Source: Scyliorhinus canicula | Taxonomy: Eukaryota | Reading direction: 5' to 3' | DNA: 64,000 nt | NCBI RefSeq assembly: GCF_902713615.1 | Contig: NC_052158.1 | Span: 53,042,823 to 53,106,822, forward strand | Shown here: positions 1 to 49,229 of the stretch, one piece after another | How the letters are laid out: each line of letters begins with the position of its first letter | Position numbering within the stretch: the first letter of the stretch is position 1 | Position numbers and translations under genes: made by a program | The notes under the pieces: generated by a model | Databases searched by the model: none | Told to the model about the DNA's origin: nothing | The model's input: only the letters and a program-made list of their open reading frames with translations

Positions 1-2332
1 GAGCCCCTGTAAATAAACCCCAACACAACACAGAGCCCCTGTAAATAAACCCCAACACAGAGCCCCTGTAAATAAACCCCAACACAACACAGAGCCCCTG
101 TAAATAATCCCCAACACAACACAGAGCCCCTGTAAATAAACCCCGAACACAGAGCCACTGTAAATAATCCCCAACACAACACAGAGCCCCTGTAAATAAA
201 CCCCGAACACAGAGCCACTGTAAATAAACCCCAACACAGCACTGAGCCCCTGTAAATAAACCCCAACACAGAGCCCCTGTAAATAAACCCCAACACAACA
301 CAGAGCCCCTGTAAATAATCCCCAACACAACACAGAGCCCCTGTAAATAAACCCCGAACACAGAGCCACTGTAAATAAACCCCAACACAGAGCCCCTGTA
401 AATAAACCCCAACACAACACAGAGCCCCTGTAAATAAACCCCAACACAACACAGAGCCCCTGTAAATAAACCCCAACACAGAGCCCCTGTAAATAAACCC
501 CAACACAACACAGAGCCCCTGTAAATAAACCCCAACACAACACAGAGCCCCTGTAAATAAACCCCAACACAGCACTGAGCCCCTGTAAATAAACCCCAAC
601 ACAGAGCCCCTGTAAATAAACCCCAACACAACACAGAGCCCCTGTAAATAAACCCCAACACAACACAGAGCCCCTGTAAATAAACCCCAACACAACACAG
701 AGCCCCTGTAAATAAACCTCAACACAGAGCCCCTGTAAATAAACCCCAACACAGAGCCCCTGTAAATAAACCCCGAACACAGAGCCCCTGTAAATAAACC
801 CCAACACAACACAGAGCCCCTGTAAATAAACCCCAACACAGAGCCCCTGTAAATAAACCTCAACACAACACAGAGCCCCTGTAAATAAACCCCAACACAA
901 CACAGAGCCCCTGTAAATAAACCCCAACACAACACAGAGCCCCTGTAAATAAACCCCAACACAACACAGAGCCCCTGTAAATAAACCTCAACACAGAGCC
1001 CCTGTAAATAAACCCCAACACAGAGCCCCTGTAAATAAACCCCGAACACAGAGCCCCTGTAAATAAACCCCAACACAACACAGAGCCCCTGTAAATAAAC
1101 CCCAACACAACACAGAGCCCCTGTAAATAAACCCCAACACAACACAGAGCCCCTGTAAATAAACCCCAACACAACACAGAGCCCCTGTAAATAAACCCCA
1201 ACACAACACAGAGCCCCTGTAAATAAACCCCAACACAACACAGAGCCCCTGTAAATAAACCCCAACACAGAGCTCCTGTAAATAAACCCCAACACAACAC
1301 AGAGCCCCTGTAAATAAACCCCAACACAACACAGAGCTCCTGTAAATAAACCCCAACCCAACACAGAGCCCCTGTAAATAAACCCCAACCCAACACAGAG
1401 CCCCTGTAAATAAACCCCAACACAGAGCCCCTGTAAATAAACCCCAACACAACACAGAGCCCCTGTAAATAAACCTCAACACAACACAGAGCCCCTGTAA
1501 ATAAACCCCAACACAACACAGAGCCCCTGTAAATAAACCCCAACACAACACAGATCCCCTGTAAATAAACCCCAACCCAACACAGAGCCCCTGTAAATAA
1601 ACCCCAACACAACACAGAGCCCCTGTAAATAAACCCCAACACAACACAGAGCCCCTGTAAATAAACCCCGAACACAGAGCCCCTGTAAATAAACCTCAAC
1701 ACAACACAGAGCCCCTGTAAATAAACCCCAACACAACACAGAGCCCCTGTAAATAAACCCCAACACAACACAGAGCCCCTGTAAATAAACCCCAACACAA
1801 CACAGAGCCCCTGTAAATAAACCCCAACACAACACAGAGCCCCTGTAAATAAACCCCAACACAACACAGAGCCCCTGTAAATAAACCCCAACACAACACA
1901 GAGCCCCTGTAAATAAACCCCAACACAACACAGAGCCCCTGTAAATAAACCCCAACACAACACAGAGCCCCTGTAAATAAACCCCAACACAGAGCCCCTG
2001 TAAATAAACCCCAACACAGAGCCCCTGTAAATAAACACCAACAAAACACAGAGCCCCTGTAAATAAACCTCAATACAACACAGAGCCCCTGTAAATAAAC
2101 CTCAATACAACACAGAGCTCCTGTAAATAAACCTCAATACAACACAGAGCTCCTGTAAATAAACCCCAACACAACACAGAGCCCCTGTAAATAAACACCA
2201 ACAAAACACAGAGCCCCTGTAAATAAACCCCGACACAGAGCCCCTGTAAATAAACCCCAACACAGAGCCCCTGTAAATAAACCCCAACCCAACACAGATC
2301 CCCTGTAAATAAACCTCAACACAACACAGAGC
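1..2332. repeat. Minisatellite with 27/32-bp units (GAGCCCCTGTAAATAAACCCCAACACA +/- ACACA), intron 1 of the putative MHC-like gene; runs off the left edge
   Basis: Direct reading: first unit 1-32, second unit 33-59, with interspersed 27- and 32-bp variants. Each unit reads GTTTATTTACAG|G on the minus strand, which is acceptor-like. Confidence 0.97.
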
Positions 2333-3420: not shown

Positions 3421-5466
3421 CCCATTACTCACTGACTGAGGGTTAATACCCCAGTACCCAGACTGAGACCCTCTCTAACCCCATTACTCACTGACTGAGG
3501 GTTAATACCCCAGTACCCAGACACTGAGACCCTCTCTGACCCCATTACTCACTGACTGAGGGTTAATACCCAACTACCCAGACACTGAGACCCTCTCTGA
3601 CCCCATTACTCACTGATTGAGGGTTAATACCCCAGTACCCAGACACTGTGACCCTCTCTGACCCCATAACCCACTGACTGAGGGTTAATACCCTAGTACC
3701 CAGACACTGAGACCCTCTCTGACCCCATTACTCACTGACTGAGGGTTAATACCCCAGTACCCAGACAGTGAGACCCTCCCTGACCCCATTACTCACTGAC
3801 TGAGGGTTAATACACCAGTACCCAGACCAAGATCCTCTCTGACCCCATTACTCACTGACTGAGGGTTAATACCCCAGTACCCAGACACTGTGACCCTCTC
3901 TGACCCCATTACCCACTGACTGAGGGTTAATACCCCAGTACCCAGACACTGAGACCCTCTCTGACCCCATTACTCACTGACTGAGGGTTAATACCCCACT
4001 ACCCAGACACTGAGACCCTCTCTGACCCCATTACTCACTGACAGGGTTAATACACCAGTACCCAGACCAAGACCCTCTCTGACCCCATTACCCACTGACT
4101 GAGGGTTAATACCCCAGTACCCAGACACAGACCCTCTCTGACCCCATTACTCACTGACTGAGGGTTAATAACCCAGTACCCAGACTGAGACCCTCTCTGA
4201 CCCCATTACTCACTGACAGGGTTAATACACCAGTACCCAGACCAAGACCCTCTCTGACCCCATTACCCACTGACTGAGGGTTAATACCCCAGTACCCAGA
4301 CTGAGACCCTCTCTGACCCCATTACCCACTGACTGAGGGTTAATACCCCAGTACCCAGACACTGAGACCCTCTCTGACCCCATTACTCACTGACAGGGTT
4401 AATACACCAGTACCCAGACCAAGACCCTCTCTGACCCCATTAGTCACTGACTGAGGGTTAATACCCCAGTACCCAGACTGAGACCCTCTCTGACCCCATT
4501 ACTCACTGACTGAGGGTTAATAACCCAGTACCCAGACACTGAGAGCTCTGTGACCCCATTACTCACTGACTGAGGGTTAATACCCCAGTACCCAGACACT
4601 GAGACCCTCTCTGACCCCATTACTCACTGACTGAGGGTTAATACACCAGTACCCAGACTGAGACCCTCTCTGACCCCATTACTCACTGACTGAGGGTTAA
4701 TACCCCAGTACCCAGACACTGAGAGCTCTGTGACCCCATTACTCACTGACTGAGGGTTAATACCCCAGTACCCAGACAGTGACCCTCTCTGACCCCATTA
4801 CCCACTGACTGAGGGTTAATACCCCAGTACCCAGACACTGAGACCCTCTCTGACCCCATTACTCACTGACTGAGGGTTAATACCCCAGTACCCAGACACT
4901 GAGACCCTCTCTGACCCCATTACCCACTGACTGAGGGTTAATACCCCAGTACCCAGACACTGAGACCCTCTCTGACCCCATTGCTCACTGACTGAGGGTT
5001 AATACCTCAATACCCAGACACTGAGACCCTCACTGACCCCATTACTCGCTGATTGAGGGTTAATACCCCAGTACCCAGACACAGACCCTCTCTGACCCCA
5101 TTACCCACTGACTGAGGGTTAATACCCCAGTACCCAGACACTGAGACCCTCTCTCACCCCATTACCCACTGAGGGTTAATACTCCAGTACCCAGACACTG
5201 AGACCCTCTCTGACCCCATTACCCACTGACTGAGGGTTAATACCCCAGTACCCAGACACTGAGACCCTCTCTGACCCCATTATCCACTGACTGAGGGTTA
5301 ATACCCCAGTACCCAGACTGAGACCCTCTCTGACGCCATTACCCACTGACTGAGGGTTAATACCCCAGTACCCAGGCTGAGACCATCTCTGACCCCATTA
5401 CTCACTGACTGAGGGTTAATACCCCAGTACCCAGACTCTGAGACCCTCTCTGACCCTATTACTCAC
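3421..5466. repeat. Minisatellite with ~61-bp units (CCCCATTACTCACTGACTGAGGGTTAATACCCCAGTACCCAGACACTGAGACCCTCTCTGA), starting at the intron 1 donor
   Basis: About 34 tandem units with small indels. On the minus strand each unit contains CAGTGAGTAATGGGG (donor-like) and GGGTCTCAG, which matches the end of the adjacent exon. Confidence 0.97.
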
Positions 5467-5512
5467 CTGCTGAGACCCCTCCAGTAATGATCAGTAATAT
5501 TAATCTCAGCAT
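5467..5512 (-). CDS. Signal-peptide (leader) exon, MLRLILLIITGGVSA+G, phase-1 intron; probable exon 1 of an MHC class I-like gene (rest of gene left of the window)
   Basis: Minus strand GCAGCA ATG CTG AGA TTA ATA TTA CTG ATC ATT ACT GGA GGG GTC TCA GCA G|GTGAGT: n-region Arg, hydrophobic core, small residues at -3/-1 (V-S-A), consensus donor, and an upstream X/Y-box promoter. The GGVSA ending matches my recollection of shark class I leaders (not database-checked). Confidence 0.72.
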
Positions 5513-5698
5513 TGCTGCTTCCTCTGTCACACTCTGATGAAGATGGTGTGAGATATCCACTTCCAGCAGACACACTCCCTGTACTCTGACTGCCTCCTGT
5601 CCCTCCAGACTCTTACTCCGTGCAGATTACACAATGCTCATTGTCTTAAACTCAGACACTTCACAATTAACATAAACTTTCCAAATGTTATGAGGTAA

Positions 5699-5761
5699 CC
5701 AATCAGAGGAACACTGTGAACAACATTGTTAGTTGCCAAGGAGAATAATAAGTTAAGGTTT
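5699..5761 (-). promoter_or_regulatory. MHC-type SXY promoter module: Y box CTGATTGG (5706-5699), RFX X1-like CCTTGGCAAC (5741-5732), weak S-like AAACCT (5761-5756)
   Basis: Motifs read directly on the minus strand. GCAAC and CTGATTGG are separated by exactly 25 nt, and the module lies ~190 bp upstream of the leader ATG. Confidence 0.65.
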
Positions 5762-5789
5762 GAGAATTGTGCAAGAACCTGAATGTAAT

Positions 5790-6560
5790 TTGATCCAGAA
5801 CATTATTTTTATTAATTTCCGAGATGTAGGTGTCGCTGGTTGGGACGTGCATTTATTATCCGTTCCTAATTGCCCTTGAGGAGGTGGTGGTGAGCTGCTT
5901 CTTGACCCACTGAAGTCCCTGAAGCGTACGTACATCCACACCGATGTTAGGGAGGAGTTCCAGGATTTTGACTGAGTGGTGGTGAAGGAACATTTAAATG
6001 TTGTGAGCATTTTAGAGGCGATCTTGCAGGTTGTGGGGTCCCCTGGTATCTGCTGCCCTTGTCTTTCTAGATGGTTGTGGTCATGGGTTTAAAAGATGCT
6101 GCCCGCGGAGCCTTGGTGAGTTCCTGCAGTGCATCATGTGGATGGTACACATGACTGTCACTTTTCATTGGGAATGGAGGGATTGCATTTTTTTGTGACT
6201 GACTTGCCAGTCAAGTAGGGTGGTAAACGTGTTAAGTGTTTTTGGAGCTTTACTCTTCTAGGCAAGTCCTGACTTGTGCATTATAGTTGGTGAAAAAGTC
6301 TTTATGGGGTCAGTGGGTGAGTTACTCGCCGCAGGATTCCTAACCTCTGACCTGCTCTTGTAGCCACAGTATTCATATTGCTACTCCAGTTCAGTTTCTG
6401 GTCAATGGTAACTCCCAGGATGTTGATAGTGAGGGCTTCAGTGATGGTAATGCCATTGAATGTCAAGGGGAGATGGTTACATTCTCTCATTGGTGATGGT
6501 CATTGCGACATGAATGTTATTTGTTACTTGTCAGCCTAAACCTGGATACTGGCCAGGTAT
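5790..6560 (-). mobile_element. L2/CR1-group LINE 3' fragment (RT C-terminus and 3' UTR)
   Basis: ORF 6302..6490 ILGVTIDQKLNWSSNMNTVATRAGQRLGILRR is a typical RT thumb/C-terminal segment. Confidence 0.75.
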
Positions 6561-7184: not shown

Positions 7185-8544
7185 CCATAATGAAATAAAA
7201 ACAGAAAATGCTGGATAAACTCGGCAGACCCGGCAGCACCTGTGGAGAGAGAAATGGAGTTAACGTTTAGAGTTTGAATGATTCTTCTTCAGAAATGAAG
7301 ATGGGTGGAAATGTGATTTATTATATATTTGGAAATGGGGGTGGAGGAACTGGAGCAGAATAGAAAGTCAGGGATAAGTCGGAGCTAAGGAGAGGTTGAC
7401 AAAGTTATCATGGACACAAGAAAAAGGGAGTGTTAATGGTGGCATCAAGGTCTAAAGAAGGTGCTGATAATGGCACAAAGGTAAGATAGCAGAATGCATT
7501 AATAGGAGGAGAGGTGTCAGTGCTCAGGGAAAACAAAAGTAAAGAACAAGTGACAGATGGCCCTGTGGGGCACGGGGAATGTTTGAAATGGGATAAACCA
7601 AGGAAACAGAAACCAAACGGGGGAGTCAAGATGGATGGGAAAGTTCACAGTCTAAAGTTGTTGAACTCAATGTTAAGTCCTGAACATTGCAGTGTTCCTA
7701 ATCGGAAGATAAGGTTTTGTTCCATTGGTTGGCGCCGCCTTAACTGGAGCATTGCAGCAGGCCCAGGATGGACATGTGGGCATGAGAGCAAAATGCTGAG
7801 TTACAATGATGAGCAACAGCATGGTTGGAGTAATGCTTGCTGATGGAGAGAAGGTGTTCTGCAAAGCGATCACCCAGTCTGCGTTTAGTCTCTCCAATAT
7901 AGAGTAGATCACATTGGGAGCAGCAAATGCAATAGACCGGATTGAAGGAGGTGCACGTGAAGCACTGGCTCACTTGAAAAGAGTGTTTAGGCCCTGGGAT
8001 GGTGAGCAGGGAGGAGATAAAGGGGAAGGTGTTGCATCTTCTCTGATTGCAGAGGAAGGTGCCTTGGGGAGGATGAGGTGTTGGGGGTGATGGAGGAGTG
8101 AAGCAGTGTGTCGTAGGCCCCTGCCGAATATTGATTGGGGTGGGGTGGGGGGAAAGATATGTTTCATTGTGGCAGCATGTTGGAGTTGGCGGAAATGGTG
8201 GAGGATGATGCTTCGAATTCGGAGGTTGGTGGGGTGAAAAATGAGGACAAGGGGAACCCTGTCATGGCTCAGGGAGGGAGGGGAAGGGCTGACAACAGAC
8301 ATGTGGGAGGTGGGTCAGACAGGTTGAGTGTCTTGTTAACCACAGTGGGAGGAATCTTCAGTTGAGGAAGAAGGCAGACTGTCCAAAGTGCCATTTTCAA
8401 AGAGAGCATCATCAAACAGAGGTGCTGGAGTCGGAGAAACTGGGAGAATGGGATAGAGTTCTCACAGGGAATGGGATGTGAGGAGCTGTAGTTGAGGTAG
8501 CTGTGGGAATTGATGTGTTTATGATGAATATTGGTGGTCAGTCT
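7185..8544 (-). mobile_element. Penelope-like element 3' part (RT C-terminus, GIY-YIG endonuclease, terminal repeat), decayed
   Basis: ORF 7740..7973 VYCICCSQCDLLYIGETKRRLGDRFAEH (GIY-YIG); ORF 8269..8703 HSYLNYSSSHP..SIPFSQFLRL (PLE RT tail); ORF 7970..8302 VPLVLIFHP. Confidence 0.88.
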
Positions 8545-48134: not shown

Positions 48135-49229
48135 ATAGATTGCTTTCTGGGCGGGATTAGTGGGGTCATTCCTGCAACATCCCAGCACTTTTTCCTCGTC
48201 CACACGAGGACGGTTCGCCATTGTCCAGAAGCGAGATATTCTGGTCCCACCGTTGTCAATGGTGATTTCTGTTGCGGGGTTGTGCATCGTCAGTGGGACT
48301 GAAAAGAATGGCTGGAAACTTCCGCTCCATTAATCCAGTGTGTTTGAATCCTGTTTCCCAATTTGAAAATTCGTCCCTGCTAATTCATTTCAACTTTGGA
48401 AATTTTACAAACCTATGCTTCTACTCATTTGGCAAAGGAATTCCTTACAATTCAACGATATTTTCCTCCAAATTTATTATTTTATTCCATTCAGGCCTAA
48501 GGGTGATGCTTAAAAATCCTGACAATTGGATGGCCTCCATGATAAACATTCCTTCGTGCAGAAGATTATATCAATCAAGGCTTTTGAGTCTGACTGGAAT
48601 GGGAAATATTTAAACAATGTAGACGATGTTCGGAAATTGCACACTGCCTGTCATTTCTACATTTGCTGAACCAAATTACTGGCAATATGTTGTTTCTAGA
48701 GTTGGATCCAATGCAGATATTTCCACCTCCAGGTGTTTCAACTGGGGTTGGATTTCGGTACCTGTGCGATAACATCTGCTGATATTACAAGATGTGGAAA
48801 CAATGGGCGAGAATTTACACAACTGTTTGCAATAGGAGGGAATGAAGTCGGGGGCGGGGGGGAGGGGGGGGGATGTGCAAAATACCACGGTTGCCAAGGA
48901 TTTACAACGGTAAGATTTCCCGCACAAATATCCTCAGCCCCCTCTATTGGCATTGATGTAGTTCCCACCGAGAAAGGCGGGGGCGGGGGGGGGGGGGGGG
49001 GGGGGTTGTGGGGGAGAACCCGTTTGAATTCATTACTATATCTTTCGCAGAATGTCTCACTATAACCTACCCCGGCTTGATAATGTGACTCTGATGTTGT
49101 GACGTCATGCTGGTGGGTTTTGCAACAGTTTTTTAAAAACGGAAACCTGACAGCCTCACTTCCGAAGGGGTTAAGAGGTAAGCGGACATTGAGCTCAGGT
49201 AGCGGGTTTATGAGGAGATATAATAATAA

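What the first reader, a model, noticed from the sequence alone, without database searches (positions are those of the whole stretch)
5699..5761. SXY-like promoter with mammalian X1-Y spacing in a shark
Seen: minus strand CCTTGGCAAC, 25 nt, CTGATTGG, with AAACCT 19 nt upstream of GCAAC. Known: MHC I, MHC II and B2M promoters use RFX (X1), CREB (X2) and NF-Y (Y) at fixed helical spacing for CIITA/NLRC5 enhanceosomes. In the HLA-DRA promoter as I recall it, GCAAC and CTGATTGG are also 25 nt apart. No X2/CRE match is visible, and no ISRE or kB element lies directly upstream because a LINE begins ~30 bp beyond. Inference: deep conservation of enhanceosome geometry, possibly in a gene with reduced interferon inducibility.
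Basis: partly seen in the sequence, partly recalled or inferred. Interest (0 to 1): 0.7.

Follow-up and report, generated by a model that had tools for sequence, protein, structure and literature searches.

The report
Shark MHC class I-like SXY-type promoter
The motifs are real and lie about 80-145 bases upstream of where a shark MHC class I-like gene starts being transcribed, in the order and spacing that mammalian MHC genes use for their RFX/NF-Y switch; this is an expected but, as far as I could find, undescribed extension of that switch to sharks.

Summary
Observation confirmed. The minus strand reads AAACCT (5761-5756), 19 nt, GCAAC inside CCTTGGCAAC (5741-5732), 25 nt, CTGATTGG (5706-5699).

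- **Chance:** the strict X1-Y pair is expected 0.003 times per 64-kb window. A lax version is expected about 0.001 times in a 300-bp promoter.
- **Promoter:** it is a working promoter. Transcript-like contigs from two studies begin at about 5621 and 5603, run through the leader exon (ATG 5512) and splice at 5467. TTTAAG lies at -29. The Y box is at -85/-78, X1 at -124/-111 and the S-like box at -147/-135.
- **Related copies:** a DNA run holds at least two. They align without gaps across the X1-Y block and keep a 13-mer around AAACCT between diverged flanks.
- **Absent:** no X2/CRE, ISRE, GAS or kappaB site in about 880 bp upstream, which is mostly transposon. The promoter is AT-rich with no CpG.
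- **Gene:** the spliced message begins MLRLILLIITGGVSA|VPHSWLVMYT, which looks class I-like and probably nonclassical.

Most likely this is a genuine S-X1-Y (RFX/NF-Y) module. Factor binding, and comparison with other shark MHC promoters, could not be tested. It is a new member of a known kind, of moderate interest. Earlier notes of this scan had already shown that the leader exon is real (s1-268227).

The parts
5756..5768 (-).
   Evidence: Sequence. The 13-mer is kept exactly in related copies of DNA run X1 while both flanks differ (loose end, aligned).
5732..5745 (-). X1-like box TTCTCCTTGGCAAC: an RFX half-site GGCAAC with a pyrimidine-rich left half; -124 to -111
   Evidence: RGYAAC match. 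Only one other CCTTGGCAAC lies in the window, and it has no CCAAT partner.
5707..5731 (-). 25-nt X1-Y spacer, where X2 would lie. It has no CRE-like sequence and holds a direct repeat TGTTCA-cag-TGTTCC.
   Evidence: no CGTCA/TGACG and no TGAYGYMA match.
5699..5706 (-). Y box CTGATTGG (inverted CCAAT, NF-Y type); -85 to -78
   Evidence: The same 8-mer is printed in an HLA-DRA promoter primer (PMC4501648).
5645..5650 (-). TATA-like TTTAAG at -29 to -24
   Evidence: Its position fits the 5' end of the RNA-like contig.
5603..5624 (-). Approximate transcription start zone, given by the 5' limits of transcript contigs. A5621 in a CA dinucleotide is taken as +1.
   Evidence: the X10 contig (727 nt) lies on 5467-5621 with 3 further letters; the X12 contig (723 nt) lies on 5467-5603. 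RNA depth is zero from 5635 to 5844.
5467..5512 (-). Coding part of the leader exon (MLRLILLIITGGVSA plus the first base of the next codon), followed by a GTGAGT donor
Evidence: Both RNA-like contigs leave the genome at 5467 with the same continuation, translated.
5800..6490 (-). 3' part of a high-copy retroelement (LINE-like tail), in the same orientation as the gene, abutting the promoter
   Evidence: Depth is 32-63 at 5800-5844 and above 20,000 from 5845 in DNA run X1. The open frame 6302-6490 has no Pfam hit. 'LINE' is my reading of its sequence, not a test.

Best explanation
This is the core of the proximal promoter of a catshark MHC class I-like gene, probably a nonclassical one. It is built as an S-X1-Y module. 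An RFX-type X1 box (TTCTCCTTGGCAAC) and an NF-Y-type Y box (CTGATTGG) lie 25 nt apart, so their centres are about 33 bp or three helical turns apart. An S-like box lies 19 nt upstream of GCAAC. The module sits 78-147 bp upstream of a TATA-like-directed start.

Inferred mechanism: RFX and NF-Y bind cooperatively on one face of the helix and form a platform for an NLRC5- or CIITA-type coactivator, as in mammalian MHC genes.

Shown here: the motifs, their geometry, promoter activity at this place, and retention of the block in related copies. Inferred: which proteins bind, and coactivator dependence. X2/CREB input and the interferon and NF-kappaB elements of classical class I promoters are absent. 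A retroelement replaces the usual upstream region.
For: - Motifs and spacing are exact.
- Chance expectation is 0.003 per window for the strict pair and about 0.001 per 300-bp promoter for a lax pair.
- RNA-like contigs from two studies start at about 5621 and 5603, cover the leader exon and splice at 5467. No RNA lies upstream of 5635.
- TTTAAG lies at -29.
- In DNA run X1, a 39-nt contig lies ungapped on exactly 5699-5737 (GGCAAC to CTGATTGG) with 4 differences, at about twice single-copy depth.
- That contig adjoins two variant contigs on 5710-5748. Their continuation keeps AATTCTCAAACCT exactly between diverged flanks, with one extra base before X1.
- SXY boxes have fixed order, orientation and spacing (PMC7866136). 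S-X is 16 bp and X-Y 20-22 bp in NLRC5 targets (PMC4374748).
- Teleost classical class I promoters keep SXY (PMC6797598).
- The whale shark has CIITA and NLRC5 orthologues (PMC8455134).
- The message begins with a class I-type alpha-1 start, xxHSxxxxYT.
Against: - No X2/CRE-like sequence in the spacer.
- The S box is poorly defined even in mammals, so the S-like match is weak on its own.
- The motifs were picked by eye after the fact.
- The positions of the 4-5 differences in the related copies are unknown, so they could fall inside the boxes.
- The related copies may be alleles rather than paralogues.
- No other shark MHC promoter could be fetched, and no position-weight-matrix library was available.
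- The transcription start rests on contig ends, which cannot fix a start precisely. The one raw-read RNA run gave no reads on the gene.
- The human spacing used for comparison is partly from memory.
Confidence: 0.65

Rival explanations
1. It is an ordinary TATA/CCAAT promoter. The Y box is a generic NF-Y site at the usual distance of about -80, and the X1-like and S-like matches are coincidences with no RFX or coactivator role.
For: CCAAT boxes near -80 are common in many promoters (general knowledge). X2 is absent. Each motif alone is at or below chance frequency in the window. Salmon nonclassical L-lineage class I genes have CCAAT boxes but no SXY (PMC6797598).
Against: An RGYAAC half-site at 27-29 nt from ATTGG is expected only about 0.001 times in a promoter-sized stretch. 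The spacing is exactly that of HLA-DRA. The gene is an MHC-family gene, for which the prior of SXY is high. The 13-mer around AAACCT and the ungapped X1-Y block persist in related copies.
Confidence: 0.22
2. The X1-like site is used by a different RFX family member (RFX1-3 or RFX7 type) together with NF-Y. This would give constitutive or tissue-specific expression without NLRC5 or CIITA.
For: TGGCAAC is a perfect half of the palindromic RFX1-3 site as I recall it. X2, which helps stabilise the mammalian enhanceosome, is missing. The gene looks nonclassical.
Against: The left half-site is degenerate, as in MHC X1 boxes. The fixed spacing to a Y box and an S-like box is the hallmark of the MHC module (PMC7866136). 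Sharks carry CIITA and NLRC5 orthologues.
Confidence: 0.08
3. The stretch is not the working promoter. Transcription starts elsewhere, for example in the retroelement upstream, and the motifs are bystanders.
For: Contig ends cannot prove a start. The raw-read RNA run gave no reads on the gene.
Against: Two independent transcript contigs end within 20 nt of each other, 24-29 nt downstream of TTTAAG, and RNA depth is zero between 5635 and 5844.
Confidence: 0.05

Closest known systems
HLA-DRA type MHC class II proximal promoter (W/S-X1-X2-Y, octamer, TATA)
   Same: The Y-box 8-mer CTGATTGG is the same (printed in PMC4501648). The X1 core GCAAC is the same, and the left half shows the same purine/pyrimidine pattern (DRA X box printed in PMC4806502). 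GCAAC-to-CTGATTGG is 25 nt, though the DRA value is partly from my memory. Both are AT-rich, CpG-free TATA-type promoters. A weak octamer-like ATGTTAAT lies at -52/-45.
   Different: There is no X2 (TGCGTCA) after X1. The module lies about 10-15 bp further from the start. The gene is class I-like, not class II. The S-like box differs in letters and lies 19 rather than 20 nt from GCAAC, although related copies have 20.
Mammalian MHC class I / B2M SXY module used by NLRC5 (Ludigs et al. 2015, PMC4374748)
   Same: S, X and Y lie upstream of the start of a class I-family gene, with tight spacing (S-X 16 bp, X-Y 20-22 bp between box edges). The S-like core AAACCT resembles the CAACCT that I recall from HLA class I promoters; this is from memory only.
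   Different: No enhancer A (kappaB) or ISRE lies upstream, and there is no X2. The promoter is not a CpG island. S-box identity, which decides NLRC5 specificity in mouse, cannot be judged here.
Teleost classical MHC class I promoters (trout, salmon, carp, catfish)
   Same: They are non-mammalian class I promoters reported to keep a full or partial SXY module (PMC6797598; PMC6523485).
   Different: Those promoters carry at least one ISRE; this one carries none within about 880 bp. I saw no teleost sequences, so the spacing could not be compared.

Membership tests
MHC SXY (W/S-X1-X2-Y) enhanceosome module | Boxes in the order S, X1, (X2), Y, all in one orientation, upstream of and pointing toward the transcription start | tested here: met
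   S-like at -147/-135, X1 at -124/-111 and Y at -85/-78 on the gene's strand. The start is estimated from RNA-like contigs.
MHC SXY (W/S-X1-X2-Y) enhanceosome module | X1 box with an RFX half-site (RGYAAC, as in CCTAGCAAC) | tested here: met
   GGCAAC lies at 5737-5732 within TTCTCCTTGGCAAC. This is a consensus match only; no weight matrix and no binding data.
MHC SXY (W/S-X1-X2-Y) enhanceosome module | X2 box (CRE-like, TGCGTCA/TGACGCG) directly after X1 | tested here: not met
   No CGTCA/TGACG or TGAYGYMA match anywhere in 5460-6500. The spacer reads TAACAATGTTGTTCACAGTGTTCCT.
MHC SXY (W/S-X1-X2-Y) enhanceosome module | Y box is an inverted CCAAT (CTGATTGG) | tested here: met
   Exact 8-mer at 5706-5699.
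MHC SXY (W/S-X1-X2-Y) enhanceosome module | Fixed X1-Y spacing (25 nt GCAAC to CTGATTGG in HLA-DRA; 20-22 bp between box edges in NLRC5 targets) | tested here: met
   25 nt here, and ungapped in related copies. The reference values are PMC4374748 and DRA oligonucleotides joined by 5 nt from memory.
MHC SXY (W/S-X1-X2-Y) enhanceosome module | S box about 16 bp upstream of the X box | tested here: inconclusive
   AAACCT lies 14 nt from CCTTGGCAAC, and 15 nt in related copies. The mammalian S consensus is loose and was not available as a matrix. Retention of the 13-mer in related copies supports a constrained element.
MHC SXY (W/S-X1-X2-Y) enhanceosome module | Recurrence in paralogous and orthologous MHC promoters | tested here: inconclusive
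   At least two related copies in DNA run X1 cover the block at 87-90% identity without gaps. Their letters inside the boxes are not visible, and no class Ia, class II or B2M promoter could be fetched.
MHC SXY (W/S-X1-X2-Y) enhanceosome module | Occupancy by RFX5/RFXAP/RFXANK and NF-Y, and transactivation by CIITA or NLRC5 | not testable with these tools
   This needs ChIP, EMSA or reporter assays. The only support is that CIITA and NLRC5 orthologues exist in a shark (PMC8455134).
Classical MHC class I promoter (enhancer A + ISRE + SXY) | kappaB (enhancer A) and ISRE upstream of SXY | tested here: not met
   No GGGRNNYYCC, GAAA-N1-2-GAAA or TTC-N2-4-GAA match in 5460-6500 on either strand. The upstream DNA is retroelement from about 5800.

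The most novel reading that the evidence does not exclude
The bare S-X1-Y arrangement seen here has no X2/CREB site and no ISRE or kappaB element, sits in an AT-rich class II-like promoter, and drives a class I-like gene. It could reflect the ancestral minimal MHC enhanceosome platform that class I and class II shared before they acquired separate inputs. On that reading X2 and the interferon elements would be later additions in bony vertebrates.
Probability: 0.1. Interest if true: 0.7.

Novelty: new member of a known kind. Interest (0 to 1): 0.4.

Why it matters
If the module works as inferred, the RFX/NF-Y geometry that recruits NLRC5 and CIITA was already fixed in the common ancestor of sharks and mammals. 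That would give a concrete, short (about 70 bp) element for testing shark NLRC5/CIITA function. It would also allow asking whether X2 and the interferon elements are ancestral or were added later. The result is expected rather than surprising. Reviews already call SXY conserved across vertebrates (PMC7281430), teleosts have it, and sharks have the coactivator genes. I found no paper describing it in a cartilaginous fish, but the library is incomplete.

Tried and rejected
- **Second copy of CCTTGGCAAC (48890-48899):** it has no CCAAT partner and lies in low-complexity DNA, so it is chance.
- **Other MHC or antigen-processing genes in the window:** a six-frame scan shows only transposon-like frames, so there is no in-window promoter to compare.
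- **Copies of the upstream repeat inside the window:** none found.
- **Pfam on upstream frames:** no hit for the LINE-like frame. There is a GIY-YIG (Penelope-type) hit at 7743-8261 and a weak gag hit at 2309-2902.
- **Fetching shark class Ia, class II or B2M promoters:** not possible. The DNA collections hold no shark genomes, the leader exon is too short for protein look-ups, and I did not type proteins from memory.
- **Earlier findings by sequence:** blank.
- **Full HLA-DRA and HLA class I SXY sequences in print:** only two DRA oligonucleotides and HLA primers containing part of the class I X box turned up. Old scanned papers listed by the search did not show the sequences.
- **Raw-read RNA run X22:** no reads on the gene, so no read-level start.
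- **Weak matches I do not claim as sites:** the octamer-like ATGTTAAT at -52 and the GTTACC that overlaps the Y box.

Full report
**Observation**

On the minus strand the window reads AAACCT (5761-5756), then 19 nt, then GCAAC (5736-5732) inside CCTTGGCAAC (5741-5732). Exactly 25 nt follow (5731-5707), then CTGATTGG (5706-5699).

GCAAC-N15-35-CTGATTGG occurs once in the window against 0.05 expected from shuffles. Each motif on its own is not enriched. Markov simulations give these expectations:

| Pattern | Expected |
|---|---|
| Strict pair at 25 nt | 0.003 per 64-kb window |
| GCAAC-N28-ATTGG | 0.0004 per 300-bp one-strand promoter |
| RGYAAC-N27-29-ATTGG | 0.0013 per 300-bp one-strand promoter |
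| Same, plus RAACCY 18-21 nt upstream | 0.00002 per 300-bp one-strand promoter |

So the composite, at this place next to a gene start, is well beyond chance, even allowing for the motifs having been chosen by eye.

**What lies around it**

An ATG at 5512 lies 187 nt downstream of the Y box. It opens a 15-codon hydrophobic leader (MLRLILLIITGGVSA) that ends one base into the next codon at 5467, followed by GTGAGT. The rest of the gene lies before the window's start. The in-window part of intron 1 holds:
- a 61-bp tandem array (3421-5474);
- a retroelement gag fragment;
- a 32-bp array (1-2332).

I laid four public runs of the same species on 5440-5880. Two transcript-like contigs from different studies cover 5467-5621 (X10, 727 nt, with 3 further letters) and 5467-5603 (X12, 723 nt). 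Both leave the genome at 5467 with the same continuation. No RNA depth lies between 5635 and 5844. The joined message translates as leader plus VPHSWLVMYT. This has the xxHSxxxxYT pattern of a class I alpha-1 start, with valine where classical molecules have the peptide-anchoring Tyr7 (my knowledge). That suggests a nonclassical class I gene.

I take A5621, in a CA dinucleotide, as the approximate start. Positions relative to it:

| Element | Position |
|---|---|
| TTTAAG | -29/-24 |
| Y box | -85/-78 |
| X1 | -124/-111 |
| S-like 13-mer | -147/-135 |

The 180 bp between the start and the upstream repeat are 35% G+C and hold no CpG.

**Upstream region**

Read depth in DNA run X1 is single-copy (about 5) up to about 5800, rises to 32-63 at 5800-5844, and exceeds 20,000 from 5845. 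The open frame 6302-6490 reads like the tail of a LINE reverse transcriptase to my eye, but it has no Pfam hit. A Penelope-type GIY-YIG frame follows at 7743-8261.

Across 5460-6500, on both strands, there is no match to any of the following (the ISRE and GAS consensus forms are those used in PMC6797598):
- ISRE (GAAA-N1-2-GAAA);
- GAS (TTC-N2-4-GAA);
- kappaB (GGGRNNYYCC);
- Sp1;
- CRE half-sites.

**Related copies**

Run X1 also holds short contigs that lie on the module at 87-90% identity.
- One 39-nt contig covers exactly 5699-5737, from the last G of CTGATTGG to the G before GCAAC. It has 4 differences, no gap, and depth 8.2 against about 5 for the locus itself.
- Two variant contigs (depths 3.9 and 7.3) cover 5710-5748 with 5 differences. 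They overlap the first contig by 30 nt, as neighbouring unitigs built from 31-letter words would.
- Their continuation beyond 5748, aligned, keeps TTCTTG and then the 13-mer AATTCTCAAACCT exactly. The three bases between these differ, and so do the 7-8 bases toward X1. One extra base makes AAACCT-to-GCAAC 20 nt instead of 19.

So at least two related promoters (paralogues or divergent alleles) keep the X1-Y block at the same length and keep an island around the S-like box. I cannot see which letters differ inside the block, so this supports constraint without proving it. Multicopy nonclassical class I families are mapped in the catshark MHC (PMC10751288). That paper never uses the word 'promoter'.

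**Comparison with the known module**

- Reviews state that W/S, X1, X2 and Y occur in fixed order, orientation and spacing (PMC7866136).
- In mouse NLRC5 targets, S-X is 16 bp and X-Y 20-22 bp between box edges, and the S box sets NLRC5 specificity (PMC4374748).
- The HLA-DRA X box is printed as CCTAGCAACAGATGCGTCATCTC (PMC4806502).
- The DRA Y region is printed as ATTTTTCTGATTGGCCAAAG (PMC4501648).
- The five bases that join these two pieces I know only from memory.
- The shark X1 (TTCTCCTTGGCAAC) and the DRA X1 with its left flank as I recall it (CTTCCCCTAGCAAC) agree at 9 of 14 positions. Every difference is a transition.
- X2 is clearly absent. In its place is a direct repeat TGTTCA-cag-TGTTCC of unknown meaning.

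Teleost classical class I promoters are reported to keep SXY plus at least one ISRE, while salmon nonclassical L genes lack SXY. A whale-shark genome paper reports direct orthologues of CIITA and NLRC5 (PMC8455134), so the coactivators exist in the lineage.

**Reading**

The most likely explanation (0.65) is a genuine S-X1-Y module in a TATA-type, CpG-free promoter of a nonclassical class I gene. It would work through cooperative RFX and NF-Y binding and recruitment of an NLRC5- or CIITA-type coactivator, without CREB, interferon or NF-kappaB inputs. The rivals are:
- a generic CCAAT/TATA promoter with coincidental X1 and S matches (0.22);
- use of the X1 site by another RFX protein, without the NLR coactivators (0.08);
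- transcription starting elsewhere (0.05).

Shown here are the motifs, the geometry, promoter use and persistence in related copies. Protein binding and inducibility are inferred.

**Novelty and score**

I found no description of SXY elements in any cartilaginous fish in the searchable library. A review does call the module conserved across vertebrates. This is a new member of a known kind. It is a useful anchor for experiments on shark MHC regulation, but it is what specialists would predict. Interest 0.4.

**Limits**

- No other shark MHC promoter could be fetched.
- No matrix library was available.
- The transcription start rests on contig ends.
- Parts of the human comparison are from memory and are marked as such.

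Noticed in passing
window 5467 and beyond (RNA contigs X10 and X12): The spliced message continues VPHSWLVMYT after the leader. This is a class I alpha-1 start with Val at the position of the peptide-anchoring Tyr7 and no LRYF motif, which points to a nonclassical class I gene.
   Followed up: partly
window 3421-5474: 34 copies of a 61-bp tandem repeat begin only a few bases after the leader exon's splice donor and fill 2 kb of intron 1.
   Followed up: no
window 1-2332: 76 copies of a 32-bp tandem repeat with strong strand skew run off the window start, still inside intron 1.
   Followed up: no
window 5707-5731 (minus): The X1-Y spacer, where X2 would sit, holds a direct repeat TGTTCA-cag-TGTTCC. 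It resembles steroid-receptor half-sites. Its meaning is unknown.
   Followed up: no
window 5666-5673 (minus): ATGTTAAT at -52/-45 lies where HLA-DRA carries its octamer, but it differs from ATGCAAAT at two positions. I regard it as a weak match.
   Followed up: no
window 5694-5699 (minus): A reverse RFX-type half-site GTTACC overlaps the 3' end of the Y box (CTGATTGGTTACC).
   Followed up: no
window 7743-8261 (minus): An open frame has a GIY-YIG domain (Pfam PF01541, E 6.5e-5). It is a Penelope-like element about 2 kb upstream of the promoter.
   Followed up: no
runs X19, X26-X30: RNA-like runs of three other coded organisms hold a few identical 31-letter words of the 5' UTR and leader stretch. 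This suggests close relatives carry the same gene family.
   Followed up: no
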